The notes: a model not told the origin generated them from the sequence alone. A stretch of 64,000 nt of DNA from Hormiphora californensis (GCA_020137815.1 CM035360.1:4030001-4094000), one strand, 5' to 3'; positions 31,073 through 64,000 are shown, numbered from the stretch's first letter. A program made the numbers and translations.

Positions 31073-31116
31073 GAGTTTCAAACTTTTCAACACTACTTTA
31101 AACAAATTAATTTGAG
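31073..31116 (+). other. Genomic copy of the ctenophore spliced-leader exon (44 nt), without a splice donor
   Basis: GAGTTTCAAACTTTTCAACACTACTTTAAACAAATTAATTTGAG matches the reverse complement of 62542-62584 at 42/43 nt and matches the pleurobrachiid SL as I recall it. It is followed by CC, not GT. Confidence 0.85.
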
Positions 31117-56841: not shown

Positions 56842-58242
56842 CCCACCCTCCCCCTCCCTGCAGACTTACTTTGACAATGACAGTAGATTAACACTCGATA
56901 TGAACAATAAACGACCCACACCATGGTATGGCGCTGTGTATTGTCAAGTACTATACTTTCCAATACACAGAGCCAGCCTGCATACGGAGGTTCCGACTGA
57001 CAATTAAATCACCACCTCCGGTGCAAAATATTTTCAGGTGTTAAGATGGGCTTATCGTGACAATATCATGAACTCTTAGACAGAGGATTGAGTAGGGCAA
57101 GTAATTAATATTCAATCCAATTAAGTTTCAATCCTCGACCCCCTTTAGTAGTGTCTAGAGATATTAGTTATACTAGACAGTAAACTGTCCACTAACACGT
57201 AACCTAAACACCCGCAAGCGGGCCGTTTCTCTCCCCTTTTTCAGTATTTAGGTCATTGAAGTTTCCTCAAGTCTTGAGTTTCCTAGTAGTCCGAGATCAA
57301 GCATCATCCTGGGTACAGTTGAAAGTACGGGGGACACGCTAGCATTATTTAGTGGCGACTAGGGAGACTAGGGATAATGGATGTGCAAGGGAGTCATGAA
57401 TGGGTGGCCCAAAACTGTGACGAAATGTATATGAACTGCTCCCGTTTCATAGACAATTGCAAACTGTGCCATGTTATTTAATCAGAGGTTTAAATTGCGA
57501 AATAAGACATAAGTGTGAAGTGAAGTATGTGTGTATGCGTGTTTTTAACTAACTTATTAACTACTAACTTATTAACTACTAATTTATTAACTAATTATCT
57601 AATGCATGAAGATCTGGACTCTTATAGTTATATAAATTGTATATACAAGGACTTAATTGACAACAGACATTAATTATTCTAATTAGTTTCTTGAATTGTG
57701 TGTATTGGAGCCTCCTTCGAATGGCCTGGGCTTATACAGTTGTGTGTGTTACCGAGCGATTCGAAGTAGGCTCCACCGCTTTAGAAAGTCGTTAGTTTTG
57801 CCTGTGTGTGATTTAGCATATGTAAGTGCTCTTCTAGCAGTAGACTACAAAGCGGAATATTAAATATTTGTATGATGATGATGATGATGATGATGATGAA
57901 TAATAATAATAATAATATTCCACGCTTGTATACCGCCCATACCCGACGGAAACATGTCAAAATATTGGCGATGTTCCGACGAGTCATCAGAGCGGTATAA
58001 CCTCGATTAAATATATGACACACACGAACACTCTGGTTGAAAAAAGAACAGTATATTGTAAGACTAAATTAACTGGACTTATAAAACTGAAGGAATAACT
58101 GGTCCCATAAACCTGTAGATATAAATTCAAAACACACTTTACTTACACCTGCTCGAAAAAAGGATACTAGGTAGTGAATTAGTAACATGGCTAGAGAGAG
58201 GATGACACTGATTGCCCGCAGGCCCCACAACTACAACAAACA

Positions 58243-61200
58243 TTACAACTCAGTCATGGGTTCCCCATCACCCACTCCAAATGCACCAACGAAGAGATGT
58301 GTTTTCAGCCGGGTTTTGAAGGTTTCCACGTTGGGGATTGACCTGAGCTCAAGGGGAAGCTCATTCCAGACAGAAGGCAGGAATACTGATAACCTCCTAC
58401 GTCTCAACTTAGAGTTGGCATTAATACTGGTCATCTTTGGATGTTTTAACCTATAGGGATCCGGAACATTAGTCATTCTCGTAGTCCTAGAGGTTCCCCA
58501 AGTCTCATCACGTGGCACCAAATCCTGGAGATAACACGGGGCTGTTCCATTGACTATTTTATAGGCAATCAAACATGCTTTGAAGTCCAGCCTGTAGGAG
58601 ATCGGTAAAATATGACACTGCCTGAAATACTCCATATAGTTGTCCTGGTGTCCATGGAGGTTAAATACAAAACGAACACAGGCATTGAGAAGTTTCTGGA
58701 GCCCGCTGAGAACTCGGCCAGGAAGTCCACAATACAGAATGTTGCTGTAATCAATTCTAGAAATGATCAACTGTTTCACCAACATGATCTTTGTTGTAAC
58801 ATCAAAACACTTGTGTAATTGCCAGAGATTCCGTAATATCAGTCCACACTGTTTCCTCACATTATTAACCTGTCGTTCAAGATTTAGATTGTGATCCAAG
58901 AGAATTCCTAGTGTTTTACCATCTGTTCCACTACATTCACTAGGGAAGATTTCTGTTCCACCGAAGTTGATTACTGGATCGAAAGTGACTTTACTTAACG
59001 AACTGCGTTTTCCAAGGAGGATGAATTCTGTCTTAGCCTCGTTGCACTTCAACCACTGTCCTACCATCCACCTCTTCACCTTCGCCAGACATTCCTCAAT
59101 ATCCACCTTTGCCTCCGACCAGCCCGTAGAATCCGTAGGAACCAGACTCACATAGAGCTGGGAGTCATCCGCGTATAGCTTTATCCGTAGACCATAAGGT
59201 TCCACAATGTCTTGCACAGCTTCAATGTATAGTAGAAACAAAATTGGACCAAGAAGGGACCCCTGGGGTACTCCACATAGTAAGGCCAGGGTTTCCGAAA
59301 GACAATCACCTACAGAGACTCTGAAAGATCTGGAACTCAGGTAGCTCTTAAACCATTGAAGAGGATCACCATCCACTCCAAACCGATTCTGCAACACCTC
59401 CAACAACTTTCCGTGATCCACTGTGTCAAACGCAGCACTCATGTCCAAACAAATGAGAGCCACTACATTTCCTTTATCCATCTCACCTAATACATCATCA
59501 AACATGCTGGCTAACAGAGTTTCACAGCTGTGCCCAACACGATAACCAGACTGGTGCTTGCCCAAAAGAGAATTCCGTTCAAGGTAATCATTTAGTTGCG
59601 TGAGAACTACCTTCTCTAGGAGCTTCGAAAGGAATGGAATATTCGAAACAGGACGGTAGTTACTGAGAGCTTCCCGATCCCCATACATATTCTTAATAGT
59701 AGGGAACACGATCGCCTTCTGGAGAGTTTCTGCTACTGTTGAATGATGGAGAGAGTGGTTCACCATTGATGTTAATACAGGAGCAAGTTCCCGTATACAC
59801 TCCTTAACTACCCAAGTGGGTAATGGGTCAAGATCGCAGTGTTTACTTGACATAGATTTCACAATTGAAACAAGTTCCTCCTCAGATACCTCTCTGAATT
59901 CCTTCCACGTTGTATGACAAGTTCTTCCAGGTTCCTCAAATTCACCAGCTTGTTGCTGTTCTTCGTTAACTTGGTTCCGAATTTTGGTCACTTTGGAACT
60001 AAAAAACTGTGAGAAATCATCAGCCAAGTTCTTAGAGCTAGTAGTTTCAGGGAGAATAGTTTCAGCCTTTCCCAGGAGTTTTTGGAGTTTATTTTGTAGT
60101 TTCTTCGGATCCCCTTTCACTGCATCCAAATCCTCTTTGATGAAAAGTGACCTCTTATCCTTATCCATATTTCCATACAGTTTCTTCAGGTCATTAAACC
60201 TCCGCTTCGCATCCTCAGTTCCATGTTTCCGCCAATACCGTTCCGCACTCCTCCTCTTACGAAGTAATCCCCTAAGTTCCTCATCCCTCCACGGCTTAAA
60301 CTTTTTCCCCGTCCTCACCCGCTTCCTCGGTACTCGCTTTTCCACTATCCCTTCCAGCCAACGATAGAAGTTCACAACACCCTCCTCTGGATCCCTCCCT
60401 TCCTCAAAATCTGCTTTCCTCAAGTCCTCTTTAAATCCCTCCAAATCCATTGACTTGTAGTCCACATATTCTCGAAACACTGATTTCTTCAGACGGGAGT
60501 TAGACAGGTCAGGTCTCACTTGAATCCCAAACCGCACCAGGAAGTGATCTGAAGTAGTACCATTTGGAAAGATGGATATGTCATCCAGAGCAGTTTCTCT
60601 CGTAGTTATCACCAGATCCAAGGTTCCTCCATGCCTATGAGTAGGCAACAGTGGTACTCTTTGTTGAAGGTCAAACGAATCCAGGAGCTCCAACAGTTTC
60701 CTCGAATAGAAGTTGTTAGCATCTTGTACCTGGAAATTTAGGTCTCCAGCGATAATCGGAGTACCTTGTTTCATAACAAGCTCAGAGAGGTAGTCACCAA
60801 ACTCCGACAGGAAAGTTGCCTCCGTAAGTCTTGACTTCGGTGTGTATGGAGGGCGGTAAATATTACAGAGTCTCTTCGGTTGGTCCCTGTCACTGATGAG
60901 AACCTCTTGAACTTGAAATGATTTATACTTGGTCTTCACCGGACACTGTCGAAGAACTAAGCCATCTCGAAAGAGAATTCCAATCCCTCCACCTCCTCTG
61001 TCTCCTCTGGGGCATGAGAATATATCCCATCCATTATCTCTGATTTCTTGGAGTTTTCCCGTGTCTGTGGACTTTAAAAATGTTTCCTGTATGAGACAGA
61101 TATCACAATCAGCGTCTTCCAGATGTGAAATAACACCTCCAGTTTTATTGACAAGAGATCGGACATTTAATGTCCCAATCTTCCAAGTCTTTTCCTGTGT

Positions 61201-61281
61201 AGTTCCTCCTTTGTCCTCGTCCAGTACAGGTTTTTTTCCTCTTTGCTGACACCTGAAGTCCTCTCCATAAGCCGTGCTCGT
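58243..61281 (-). CDS. LINE ORF2: APE endonuclease + reverse transcriptase; open frame extends upstream to 61281 without an ATG
   Basis: KIGTLNVRSL, IQETFL, GGGIG, IYRPP, GDLN, TLDLV and SDH (APE). NYRPVS, QSGYR, LDMSAAFDTVDH, GVPQGSLLGP and YADD (RT). Confidence 0.93.
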   Translation of the reverse strand, partial: TSTAYGEDFRCQQRGKKPVLDEDKGGTTQEKTWKIGTLNVRSLVNKTGGVISHLEDADCDICLIQETFLKSTDTGKLQEIRDNGWDIFSCPRGDRGGGGIGILFRDGLVLRQCPVKTKYKSFQVQEVLISDRDQPKRLCNIYRPPYTPKSRLTEATFLSEFGDYLSELVMKQGTPIIAGDLNFQVQDANNFYSRKLLELLDSFDLQQRVPLLPTHRHGGTLDLVITTRETALDDISIFPNGTTSDHFLVRFGIQVRPDLSNSRLKKSVFREYVDYKSMDLEGFKEDLRKADFEEGRDPEEGVVNFYRWLEGIVEKRVPRKRVRTGKKFKPWRDEELRGLLRKRRSAERYWRKHGTEDAKRRFNDLKKLYGNMDKDKRSLFIKEDLDAVKGDPKKLQNKLQKLLGKAETILPETTSSKNLADDFSQFFSSKVTKIRNQVNEEQQQAGEFEEPGRTCHTTWKEFREVSEEELVSIVKSMSSKHCDLDPLPTWVVKECIRELAPVLTSMVNHSLHHSTVAETLQKAIVFPTIKNMYGDREALSNYRPVSNIPFLSKLLEKVVLTQLNDYLERNSLLGKHQSGYRVGHSCETLLASMFDDVLGEMDKGNVVALICLDMSAAFDTVDHGKLLEVLQNRFGVDGDPLQWFKSYLSSRSFRVSVGDCLSETLALLCGVPQGSLLGPILFLLYIEAVQDIVEPYGLRIKLYADDSQLYVSLVPTDSTGWSEAKVDIEECLAKVKRWMVGQWLKCNEAKTEFILLGKRSSLSKVTFDPVINFGGTEIFPSECSGTDGKTLGILLDHNLNLERQVNNVRKQCGLILRNLWQLHKCFDVTTKIMLVKQLIISRIDYSNILYCGLPGRVLSGLQKLLNACVRFVFNLHGHQDNYMEYFRQCHILPISYRLDFKACLIAYKIVNGTAPCYLQDLVPRDETWGTSRTTRMTNVPDPYRLKHPKMTSINANSKLRRRRLSVFLPSVWNELPLELRSIPNVETFKTRLKTHLFVGAFGVGDGEPMTEL

Positions 61282-62401
61282 TCATTGATGTACGAGGGAC
61301 ACCACATACTAGAAGCTGTATGGGTCCTCGCATACTTCTTGTCCTCTCTTGATCCTCCCACCGCACAGTTCACACACTTCATCTTACCAGTCTCGTTGTT
61401 CTTCTTTGCTCTACAGTCCTTTGTCTGGTGTGTTCCAGCACAAAAACAGCACACAGGATTTTCCTTCTGAGGACAGTAGATTGAGCCTGCTATATGTCCG
61501 TATCCTTGACAGTGATAGCATTGAATCACATGATACCTGTTCTTGACAAAATGTTGTCGAAGACCTAAGTTGAGTTTATCACCGTTGTTAGACAAAAGCC
61601 TCCGGATCTCTGGAGCCATCTGGATCACCGCATACCTATCTCTTTCGCTAACAAACACCACTTTCAACTTCTTATCCTCATGATAAAGCTTTCTGATATC
61701 CTCATTTTTGTCCAAAATCGCTGCCAGGATAGTTTCCTTTTTCAGTAGTTCAGGGTTCAAATCATTGATGGTAACCTTTGGTTCAAGCTTCTTGGCTTCC
61801 TCTGAGAAGAATGACATAGAACAGTCCTGTGCAAGAGGAGTCAAAACTTTCTCTGCTTCCTTCATCTGGTCTTCATTAGGGAAATACAGCCGGGTATGGT
61901 CACTCTGGATCTCACCACCGGTATCGTCTTCAACGCAGTTTCCACTTTAGGTTTGACCTCATCAGTCCACTTCTTCGCACAGAATCCTGGCCCTCCTTCC
62001 TCATTGATGCCAGTTTTAATATTCACATAGTGTTTCATCGTAGGTATAACCGGTTCCTCTGGATCACCACCACCAATATCACTTCTACTATTCTCCATAG
62101 GTTTGACCAAAGCAGAGATAGTGGAAACCAGATCCTTGTGCAGCTTTGCAAACGACTCTTTCAGATCAGTCTGGTCTCCAGGAACAGAAAACGGTGCCGA
62201 CGCCGGAAGCATGTTGTAACAGGCTTTGAGGAGATGCCACAACTGAGGTTTATGGACAGACGACGGACAAACAGTGTCACCCCTCTCAAGGCACACTAAC
62301 AAATCACTACCCTTATAATCATTACTAAATACTTCTCCTGATAACACGTCTTCAAAATCACTCTTAGTGATACATATGTCATAATTACTCGTAACGGTCA
62401 T
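61167..62401 (-). CDS. LINE ORF1, gag-like with three Zn-knuckles (one frameshift near 61900)
   Basis: CYHCQGYGH..C, CCFCAGTHQTKDC and CVNC...H....C. The two ORFs 62401-61862 and 61865-61167 join across a frameshift. Confidence 0.85.
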
Positions 62402-62541
62402 CCTAAAACACCCGTTGCACGCCGGCCAACAGCAAACTCTTCACTGATATCACTCGTAAGTTAAGTTAAAGTAGGCCTAACAGAGATCTATAAGATTAGA
62501 GAATAGATGCTAACACAGTTATCGGAACGATTGACGGCAAA

Positions 62542-62584
62542 CTCAAAATAATTTGTTTAAAGTAGTGTTGAAAAGTTTGAAACT
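62542..62584 (-). other. Spliced-leader exon copy forming the LINE 5' end
   Basis: The minus strand reads AGTTTCAAACTTTTCAACACTACTTTAAACAAATTATTTTGAG, with 1 mismatch to 31074-31116. It is followed by TTTGCC, so there is no GT donor. Confidence 0.87.
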
Positions 62585-64000
62585 TTATTTATTGGTTTTT
62601 TTTAGATCACTAGCCTTTTACTTGAATCAATTATTAAACTATACTACTTACTTAGTATTTACACTATGTACTTATTAATCAACAGTTAATTATCTAACTA
62701 GTTAATTATCTAACTAGTTAATTATCAATTATCTACCTAGTTAATTTCTCAATTATCTAACTACTTAATCACTCATCGAATTAATTACGCTATTTCTTAA
62801 TTAGATATTTTATAACCCTTATTTTCTACATACATTTATATATATATATATTATATCGAATGACTGCCGACGGTTTTTTAAGGCCTTTAGGATCTTATAA
62901 TCCTATAAGAGCCGCTTTAGAAGGCTTGTTAGTGGTGGGTGCGTTGCTTCAATCGACTGATTGAAACGGCGTCCTCCTAGCACTAACAATGCATAGGCCC
63001 AAAAGCGGGATATAAATTATAATTGTATTTGTATTTGTATTTGTATCCGGACGGTCTGTACAATTTATTTGCGATTTCGATGGTTTTGCATTTTTAAAAA
63101 AAGTGTGAATTTTTAATTTGCTTTCCTGAGAACATCTTCTCAAATATTAAAAACCTTTGGAAAGGTGAATTTATGATTCTCCCGTCATTGATAAGTAAAA
63201 AATGCCAGCAACCAGTCTTCGGTATGCGATTGGTTGTGCTCTGACGGCTGACCTATTTGGAATTCTGGAAAATAGGGGCATTTATGGCGAGTACTAAACT
63301 TTGCAGTTATTATACAAATGATGGAAGAGGTGGAGTTGGAAGGTTATGTGAATAAGAAAGGTTTGTTCTAGATATTGACCTCAAGCCACAGCTCTCTTTC
63401 CATTTCTTCCCCTTTTTGTCAGTCCCACTGACAGAATTGTCAGAAATGAGTAATGGGCTACCAAAAACGAAATTTTAACGGCCAAACCCCATTCAGGAGT
63501 ACCTCTAGCTATAGAAATATGCCACCAGTCACGGGTCACCACCAGACACCGAGAGTTAGAGCGGTTAGTGCCATTTTAGTGAATCAAATTTGTTGGCAGC
63601 GTGCACCTGTAAACAGGCCACGAAACACCCAGATCGTAACGGCGTATACTCCATTTTTTCAACTGTTCACCCCCCCAAAGTCGTGTGTGGAATTGTTTTG
63701 CGTGTTTATCACATGTTAACGTGTAGCGCGCGCCACGAAAATTCTAAATTTCAGTTTTTGGGTAAACAGTTGAAAAAAAATGGACTTTAACTTTAAGTCG
63801 AATTTATTGAAACCGACTGCCCACCCTATGACACGCGATTTGTTGATTGCGAACTTGAGTGTTTTTGTGCTCTTATTCTTTTGTTCTTCAAACAATTATT
63901 TGCCCTACTCAGCACTCCACTCTGTGAGACCTCAGACCTACGGCCATCATACACGTACGAGGGTTCTGCAGCGCATGTCAATCCATTTTCTTAGACTTAA

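What the first reader, a model, noticed from the sequence alone, without database searches (positions are those of the whole stretch)
57872..62584. Full-length LINE whose 5' end is the host spliced leader: a candidate trans-splicing-dependent retrotransposon
Seen in the sequence: a 43-nt SL copy lies in the same orientation as the LINE, 140 nt before the ORF1 ATG with no upstream ATG. It has no GT donor and AT-rich non-element DNA lies beyond it. Established: ctenophores trans-splice an SL onto mRNAs, and LINEs normally keep an internal promoter to regenerate their 5' end. NeSL and SLACS/CRE elements exploit SL genes by inserting into them, which is a different arrangement. Inference: this L2/CR1-group RNA was trans-spliced and then fully reverse-transcribed. 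The retained SL ends in TTTTGAG, which could itself act as a trans-splice acceptor, so any read-through transcript would have the old SL replaced by a new capped SL at the same junction. That would give a promoter-independent, self-regenerating 5' end. The single mismatch to the other copy (A>T) makes the tract more pyrimidine-rich.
Basis: partly seen in the sequence, partly recalled or inferred. Interest (0 to 1): 0.9.

Follow-up and report, generated by a model that had tools for sequence, protein, structure and literature searches.

The report
LINE family headed by host spliced leader
A ctenophore jumping gene (a LINE retrotransposon) starts, in every 5'-complete genomic copy examined, with the host's 43-base spliced leader, so its RNA is capped by the host's trans-splicing machinery before it is copied back into DNA, which is an unusual way for such an element to rebuild its 5' end.

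Summary
The element lies on the minus strand (62584 to about 57899). It starts with a 43-nt copy of the published Hormiphora californensis spliced leader (SL), with one mismatch at 62548. A 140-nt ATG-free 5'UTR, ORF1, ORF2 (endonuclease plus reverse transcriptase) and an (ATT)n tail follow.

It is not an SL RNA gene and is not inserted in one. The 16 real SL genes have a conserved promoter, a GTAAGC donor and an Sm-like site, and all three are absent here.

All 37 5'-complete copies examined carry the SL at the identical junction, with different upstream flanks and ragged starts (mostly SL nt 1-3). A junction 28-mer search finds 35 copies genome-wide. No copy has a longer non-SL 5' end. So the template RNAs were trans-spliced and fully reverse-transcribed.

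Re-use of the retained SL's terminal AG is not shown for this family. A sibling family gives indirect support: two different leaders and a 3-nt junction variant occur at one junction, and every copy is SL-headed.

Corrections:
- This copy has a private 7-nt deletion that splits ORF1.
- The A>T change is private too.
- The upstream flank is another dispersed repeat.
- The L2/CR1 assignment is untested.

Other first-stage notes flag the same pattern elsewhere in this genome; none was followed up.

The parts
62542..62584 (-). 43-nt copy of the host spliced-leader exon (SL-A). It is complete from nt 1 and has one private mismatch at 62548 (canonical A, here T).
   Evidence: The exon boundary is exact, and no GTAAGC donor follows.
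62402..62541 (-). 5'UTR of 140 nt with no ATG. It begins TTTGCCGTCAATCG and is highly conserved across subfamilies.
   Evidence: No Rfam ribozyme match at E<=1.
61862..62401 (-). ORF1, N-terminal part (179 codons). It ends early because a private 7-nt deletion near 61905 shifts the frame.
   Evidence: The relatives L032, L033, L066 and L069 have one 425-426-codon frame.
61167..61946 (-). ORF1, C-terminal part in the shifted frame (259-codon open stretch containing Cys/His knuckle-like motifs).
   Evidence: No Pfam match.
58243..61281 (-). ORF2, an open frame of 1012 codons plus stop. It encodes an apurinic-type endonuclease followed by a reverse transcriptase. It overlaps the ORF1 end by about 115 nt in the -1 frame and has no early ATG.
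   Evidence: (RVT_1 E=2.8e-26, Exo_endo_phos_2 E=1e-8), (relatives with the same three Pfam domains; nearest solved structure is LINE-1 ORF2p).
57914..58242 (-). 3'UTR.
   Evidence: Aligned between copies up to GGAATATT, just before the tail.
57872..57913 (-). 3' tail. (ATT)5 lies at 57899-57913. (CAT)9 at 57872-57898 follows, and other copies lack it, so it may be target DNA.
62599..62984 (.). Upstream flank. It is a different dispersed repeat, and all its copies end at 62599 in an A-run, 11 nt before the SL.
   Evidence: about 30 copies at 94-98% identity, all matching query positions 1-386.

Best explanation
This is a full-length copy of an endonuclease-plus-reverse-transcriptase LINE family of the ctenophore host. 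ORF1 is frameshifted in this copy.

Shown:
- The RNA that makes new copies carries the host spliced leader SL-A. The leader is joined by trans-splicing at one fixed site 140 nt before ORF1.
- That RNA is reverse-transcribed to within a few bases of the capped end. Every 5'-complete copy therefore starts inside SL nt 1-19, mostly nt 1-3.

Inferred:
- Every copy that could serve as a source is itself SL-headed, and no copy carries a private promoter or outron.
- New template RNAs therefore most likely come from transcripts that begin upstream of the junction, either by read-through from the flank or at or near the old SL.
- These transcripts would be trans-spliced again at the AG that ends the retained SL. 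The old leader is then replaced by a fresh capped one, and the same 5' end is restored in each cycle.

My sub-confidences: about 0.9 that the templates were SL-trans-spliced RNAs, and about 0.55 that the retained SL's AG is the acceptor that is reused.
For: For trans-spliced templates:
- The leader is identical to the host SL found on at least 56% of Iso-Seq reads.
- Only the exon is present, cut exactly at the donor boundary. The real SL genes continue with GTAAGCTGAG and an Sm-like CCTTTTGG and have a conserved upstream block. None of these is present here.
- All 37 5'-complete copies examined, including old decayed ones, share the same junction, with unrelated flanks and ragged starts. 35 junction 28-mers occur genome-wide.
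- Subfamilies 74-99% identical in the body all carry the canonical SL.
- 0 of 31 SL columns carry a variant shared between copies, against 101 of 400 columns in the UTR plus ORF1 (p=0.0003).

For the wider pattern:
- At least 497 SL-A cores occur in the genome but only 16 SL genes.
- 30 of 30 sampled loci are heads of about 20 different repeats or retrocopies.

For leader replacement (sibling family A):
- All 36 listed 5' ends of family A are SL-headed.
- They comprise 23 SL-A|CAG..., 3 SL-A without CAG, and 10 copies headed by a second leader, SL-B (plus one SL-B-like variant).
- The two CAG-less copies held lie in different lineages (27 informative sites against 1).
Against: - There is no direct RNA evidence. 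The only runs served were seawater metatranscriptome contigs. They hold LINE pieces at 95-99% identity, but no listed contig bridges the SL-LINE junction or the flank-SL boundary.
- GAG has G at position -3, a disfavoured acceptor by general splice-site knowledge, and no clear polypyrimidine tract or branch site was identified in the SL.
- The lack of shared SL variants is not significant against the adjacent, also conserved, 5'UTR alone (p=0.076). Constraint could therefore mimic renewal.
- This family shows only SL-A and one junction form. Replacement is seen only in another family.
- No target-site duplications were found to delimit the insert independently.
Confidence: 0.6

Rival explanations
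1. Master copies with a private outron. A few source elements keep a non-SL upstream region with a promoter and a normal acceptor. Only their trans-spliced RNAs are copied, so SL-headed copies would all be dead-end daughters.
For: This is the standard way a trans-spliced gene works. The fixed junction, and the two leaders and CAG variant of family A, would also fit it.
Against: - None of the 37 5'-complete LINE copies and none of the 36 listed family-A 5' ends has a non-SL upstream sequence.
- At least five subfamilies, from 74% to 99% identity, would each need a master that is absent from a chromosome-scale assembly.
Confidence: 0.15
2. Inherited leader with an internal promoter. The SL was captured once by trans-splicing and is now ordinary element DNA. 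Downstream promoter elements in the conserved 5'UTR start transcription at or near SL nt 1, and selection keeps the SL sequence.
For: - The 5'UTR is much more conserved than ORF1.
- Many LINEs direct initiation at their first base (general knowledge).
- A promoter role for a retroposed leader has been proposed for dinoflagellate retrogenes (PMC6050394).
- Only copies complete to nt 1 (7 of 34) would need to be active.
Against: - Not one SL variant is shared within any lineage, although bodies diverge by up to 26%.
- About 20 unrelated families all carry the exact host leader.
- In family A the leader type and the junction change among SL-headed lineages.
Confidence: 0.18
3. Template switching. 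The LINE reverse transcriptase jumps from the 5' end of LINE RNA onto SL RNA or another SL-capped mRNA, as in U6-L1 chimeras.
For: Such chimeras are known for human L1 (general knowledge).
Against: - The junction is invariant at element nt 1 in all 37 5'-complete copies examined, and the SL part stops exactly at the exon boundary.
- Copying free SL RNA would bring in its intron part (GTAAGC...), which is never seen.
Confidence: 0.03
4. Insertion into an SL RNA gene, as CRE, SLACS, CZAR and NeSL elements do.
For: The SL lies directly next to a retrotransposon.
Against: - The upstream flanks all differ and lack the conserved SL-gene promoter block.
- No SL intron or Sm site follows the 3' tail.
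- The endonuclease is of the apurinic type and lies N-terminal to the RT, not a restriction-like one.
Confidence: 0.01

Closest known systems
Dinoflagellate SL-tagged retrogenes ('recycled' cDNAs; Slamovits and Keeling 2008, as reviewed in PMC6050394)
   Same: A trans-spliced leader is written back into the genome at the 5' end of retroposed copies. The copies are transcribed and trans-spliced again, and a functional role for the retroposed leader has been proposed.
   Different: Those are host genes copied by a borrowed machinery, and they often show tandem leader relics. Here an autonomous LINE family, and many other repeat families, carries exactly one complete leader at a fixed junction in every 5'-complete copy, with no relics.
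SL trans-splicing of transposon transcripts in Hydra (PMC12220107)
   Same: About 30% of transposon Iso-Seq reads carry the host SL, so transposon RNAs use the host trans-splicing machinery.
   Different: In the passages I read, the evidence there is at the RNA level only. Here the leader is fixed in the DNA as the 5' terminus of the whole family.
LINEs that cut their 5' end out of co-transcripts with an HDV-like ribozyme (R2; L1Tc, PMC3185411)
   Same: The element has no promoter or depends on co-transcription, and its exact 5' end is remade by RNA processing in each cycle.
   Different: There the processing is self-cleavage by a ribozyme. Here no ribozyme is detected, and the host spliceosome with SL RNA would do the job and also supply a cap.
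SL-gene-specific retrotransposons (CRE1/2, SLACS, CZAR, NeSL-1)
   Same: Retrotransposons physically linked to spliced-leader sequence.
   Different: Those insert into SL RNA genes and encode a restriction-like endonuclease. This element is dispersed, has an apurinic-type endonuclease and carries only the spliced exon.

Membership tests
Non-LTR retrotransposon (LINE) with apurinic-type endonuclease | Reverse transcriptase domain | tested here: met
   Pfam RVT_1 at E=2.8e-26. The nearest solved chain is LINE-1 ORF2p at E=1e-10.
Non-LTR retrotransposon (LINE) with apurinic-type endonuclease | Exo_endo_phos endonuclease N-terminal to the RT | tested here: met
   Exo_endo_phos_2 at E=1e-8 and Exo_endo_phos at E=4e-4. 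Relatives carry all three domains.
Non-LTR retrotransposon (LINE) with apurinic-type endonuclease | Dispersed copies with 5' truncations, no LTRs and a simple-repeat 3' tail | tested here: met
   42 ORF2 matches, several of them 5'-truncated. All aligned copies with a 3' end held finish in an (ATT)n tail.
Non-LTR retrotransposon (LINE) with apurinic-type endonuclease | Target-site duplications | tested here: inconclusive
   No clear duplications in 8 copies with both ends held. One copy sits in a tandem repeat.
CR1/L2 group of LINEs | Placement in that clade by RT phylogeny with reference elements | not tested
   No reference sequences were available. Database relatives are unnamed. The microsatellite tail and weak or absent duplications are compatible but not diagnostic.
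SL RNA gene | Conserved upstream promoter block, GT donor after the exon, and an Sm-like site with flanking stems | tested here: not met
   The 16 real genes have all three. The window copy has unrelated upstream DNA, and TTTGCC follows the exon.
SL-gene-targeting retrotransposons (CRE/SLACS/CZAR/NeSL) | Site-specific insertion inside SL RNA genes | tested here: not met
   Each of the 37 copies examined has a different upstream flank apart from one local duplicate pair, and no SL intron follows the 3' tails examined.
SL-gene-targeting retrotransposons (CRE/SLACS/CZAR/NeSL) | Restriction-enzyme-like endonuclease C-terminal to the RT | tested here: not met
   The endonuclease is of the apurinic type and N-terminal.
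Ribozyme-processed LINEs (R2, RTE, L1Tc type) | Self-cleaving ribozyme at the 5' end | tested here: not met
   No Rfam family at the gathering score in the window and none at E<=1 in 62100-62750. Only described ribozyme families can be found this way.
SL-tagged retrocopies (dinoflagellate type) | Spliced-leader exon, without its intron, at the 5' end of a retroposed sequence | tested here: met
SL-tagged retrocopies (dinoflagellate type) | Derived from a host gene; tandem leader relics | tested here: not met
   The element is autonomous with its own RT. It has a single leader, and no tandem same-strand leaders occur among the first 100 listed places.
Template-switch chimeras (U6-L1 type) | Variable junction between the small RNA and the truncated element | tested here: not met
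   The junction is identical in all copies.

The most novel reading that the evidence does not exclude
Ctenophore retroelements of several classes have given up their own 5' promoter. The DNA copy of the spliced leader at their head would act as a portable trans-splice acceptor. Any transcript that runs into a copy would then be trimmed at the old leader's AG and given a new capped leader, which makes a translatable, full-length, self-renewing template. This cycle would account for about 97% of the roughly 500-700 leader copies in the genome. The genome paper listed those copies simply as leader sequences in the genome.
Probability: 0.5. Interest if true: 0.9.

Novelty: new variant of a known kind. 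Interest (0 to 1): 0.8.

Why it matters
LINEs must rebuild their 5' end in every generation. The known solutions are internal promoters and 5' ribozymes acting on co-transcripts. A family whose every 5'-complete copy begins with the host spliced leader points to a third solution, in which the host trans-splicing machinery defines and caps the 5' end.

It also changes how the several hundred leader copies in ctenophore genomes should be read. H. californensis has 718 reported copies and Mnemiopsis 491. In this genome only 16 are SL RNA genes, and all those sampled elsewhere are heads of retrocopies. This matters for gene annotation, because the genome paper notes that leader-bearing long reads may be mis-mapped to the nearest SL copy. 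It also matters for SL gene counts, and it offers a built-in tag for dating retroposition.

The idea is directly testable with existing long-read RNA data.

Tried and rejected
- **RNA evidence.** No Hormiphora RNA run held the stretch: the one same-label run listed had none of its words and may be DNA. The seawater metatranscriptome contigs laid instead hold LINE pieces, but no listed contig bridges the junction. One joint, SL to 61709, does not follow an AG, so it was left unexplained.
- **Cross-species test.** Close relatives exist, about 90% identical in Pleurobrachia bachei, plus many ENA contigs of 4-5.7 kb.
- **Metagenome scan.** It returned only distant relatives at 28-43% identity. None contains the leader.
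- **Viral contigs.** Nothing was found.
- **More genome DNA.** The 5'-truncated copies, the SL-B gene candidate and the phylogeny of SL-A against SL-B copies could therefore not be examined.
- **Target-site duplications.** None were convincing.
- **Ribozymes.** No Rfam match was found at the LINE head or at the hammerhead-like core after the other SL copy.
- **ORF1.** No Pfam family matched.
- **Clade assignment.** The Atlas and PDB searches gave only a generic LINE result.
- **Rejected explanations.** SL RNA gene, insertion into an SL gene, and template switching were rejected (see the rival explanations).
- **Literature.** No paper in the held library describes SL-headed LINEs in ctenophores. 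Derelle et al. 2010 is not held.
Full report
**What is there.**
- The window lies on chromosome-scale contig C11 of a 110.7-Mb genome. Its size and its leader sequence match Hormiphora californensis (PMC8527503).
- The element is on the minus strand.
- Read 5' to 3', it starts at 62584 with a 43-nt copy of the host spliced leader (62584-62542).
- A 140-nt 5'UTR without ATG follows, then ORF1 from the ATG at 62401.
- ORF2 is a 1012-codon open frame (61281-58246) with an apurinic-type endonuclease and a reverse transcriptase. A 3'UTR and an (ATT)5 tail complete the element.
- The leader differs at one base (62548) from the only other copy in the window, at 31074-31116. Shuffled sequence gives no match.

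**It is not an SL RNA gene, and it is not inserted into one.**
- I found the real SL genes. They consist of the exon AGTTTC...TTTGAG, then GTAAGCTGAG, a stem, an Sm-like CCTTTTGG and a second stem. A conserved block ending in CCATCAG precedes the exon.
- Only 16 such genes exist. There is a cluster on C13, three head-to-head pairs and one single gene.
- The LINE head has unrelated DNA upstream and element sequence directly after GAG. The DNA after the 3' tail has no SL intron.

**The family test.**
- A search with the first 400 nt after the leader gave 40 matches.
- In all 30 loci fetched, and in 7 further copies, the leader precedes TTTGCCGTCAATCG at exactly the same position. This holds even for old copies in which leader and body have decayed together.
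- Upstream flanks are unrelated apart from one local duplicate pair.
- Of the 34 copies scored, 23 begin at leader nt 1-3 and the rest begin at nt 4-19. This is the pattern expected when reverse transcription runs to, or nearly to, the 5' end of a leader-bearing RNA.
- Genome-wide there are 35 junction 28-mers. 34 are perfect, and the only mismatch is the window copy's.
- No copy has a longer non-SL 5' end.
- Subfamilies range from 99% to 74% identity in the body, and all carry the canonical leader.
- The leader columns carry no variant shared between copies (0 of 31). The 5'UTR has 15 of 140 (p=0.076), and the UTR plus ORF1 has 101 of 400 (p=0.0003).
- Template switching onto free SL RNA is excluded by the invariant junction and by the absence of intron sequence.

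**State of this copy.**
- The normal family layout is one ORF1 frame of about 425 codons and an ORF2 of 1012-1013 codons in the -1 frame, overlapping by about 110 nt.
- The window copy has a private 7-nt deletion near 61905 that splits ORF1. Its ORF2 is open.
- It differs by about 1.1% from its nearest relatives, which have an open ORF1.
- The A>T in its leader is private as well, so I give it no functional weight.
- Other copies end in (ATT)n only, so the (CAT)9 at 57872-57898 may be target DNA.
- The upstream flank is another dispersed repeat that ends in an A-run 11 nt before the leader.

**The wider pattern.**
- The 31-nt leader core occurs 497 times in the genome, and the reversed control gives 0. 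Only 16 of these are genes.
- The first 30 loci on C1 are all non-genes. The leader is followed by about 20 unrelated sequence classes, several of them multi-copy, and many have a long ORF starting within about 20 nt.
- A second leader, SL-B, shares the first 13 nt with SL-A and ends in ACTATTTATTGAG. It is also dispersed in at least 138 copies with ragged starts. There is one exact SL-B+GTAAG site, on C13.

**Evidence bearing on re-splicing.**
- In sibling family A, all 36 listed 5' ends are leader-headed. They comprise 23 SL-A|CAGGAAG, 3 SL-A|GAAG, 10 SL-B|CAGGAAG and one variant.
- The two CAG-less copies I hold belong to different lineages. 27 informative sites separate them, and only 1 joins them.
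- One family therefore received different leaders, and used acceptors 3 nt apart, repeatedly, while no copy with a non-leader upstream region exists.
- The simplest reading is that transcripts of leader-headed copies are trans-spliced again at or next to the old leader's terminal AG.
- For the window's family this is inference only. It shows one leader and one junction.

**What could not be done.**
- RNA data were limited to environmental contigs and were not decisive.

**Comparison with what is known.**
- Dinoflagellate retrogenes carry leader relics and are re-spliced.
- Hydra transposon transcripts carry the SL at the RNA level.
- R2 and L1Tc remake their 5' ends with ribozymes.
- CRE and NeSL elements insert into SL genes.
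- None of these is an autonomous LINE family with the host leader as its fixed genomic 5' terminus, and I found no such report in the held library.

**Verdict.**
- That the templates were trans-spliced is well supported.
- The self-regenerating acceptor is plausible, at about one in two.
- I rate it a new variant of a known kind, with interest 0.8.

Noticed in passing
window 31074-31116 (+) and downstream to about 31160: The second, canonical SL-A copy in the window is followed at once by a hammerhead-like core (CTGATGA, a short stem, GAAAC). Related short repeats occur at L002, L019 and L022. Rfam gives no hammerhead match at E<=1. A partial leader (nt 1-11) lies 9 nt upstream of this copy.
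   Followed up: partly
genome, e.g. C13:3181656-3195351, C5:6431345/6431980, C9:4528289/4528847, C11:221861/222496 (loci L078-L086): Only 16 bona fide SL-A RNA genes exist. They form one cluster of 9 (8 perfect, 1 with 2 mismatches), three head-to-head pairs about 610 nt apart and one single gene. All those read (L078-L086) have a conserved promoter block, a GTAAGC donor and an Sm-like site.
   Followed up: yes
genome, e.g. C1:2355161-2355195, C1:2144255-2144289; candidate gene at C13:2741217: A second spliced leader (SL-B, about 44 nt) has the same first 13 nt as SL-A and ends in ACTATTTATTGAG. At least 138 dispersed copies with ragged 5' ends exist. It falls outside the >90%-identity criterion by which the genome paper counted leader sequences.
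   Followed up: partly
window 62599-62984: A dispersed repeat of about 30 copies at 94-98% identity contains a 16-nt AT-rich minisatellite and ends in an A-run. The LINE head lies 11 nt beyond its end. Similar minisatellite sequence lies beyond the LINE's 3' end (57545-57618).
   Followed up: partly
window 61167-61281: In the ORF1/ORF2 overlap ORF2 has no early ATG, and the heptamer A AAA AAC lies in the overlap. This fits -1 frameshifting, as another first-stage note proposed.
   Followed up: partly
genome, e.g. C3:1526729/1526768, C3:400021/400066, C2:8210008/8210059; L009, L012: Leader copies occur in head-to-head inverted pairs separated by 0-30 nt. Those I could read are followed by hammerhead-like cores, which is reminiscent of the inverted arrangements of Penelope-like elements.
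   Followed up: no
window 61709 / 62542 (run X5): One metatranscriptome contig joins the leader's 3' end to LINE position 61709, which is not preceded by AG. Its origin is unexplained; it may come from a related element or be a misjoin.
   Followed up: partly
L001, L007, L015, L017, L020, L026, L027, L029, L030: Several leader-headed families share a GC-rich hairpin motif (CCGCCC or AGCCCC, four bases, then GGGCAG) 15-30 nt after the leader. Its function is unknown.
   Followed up: no
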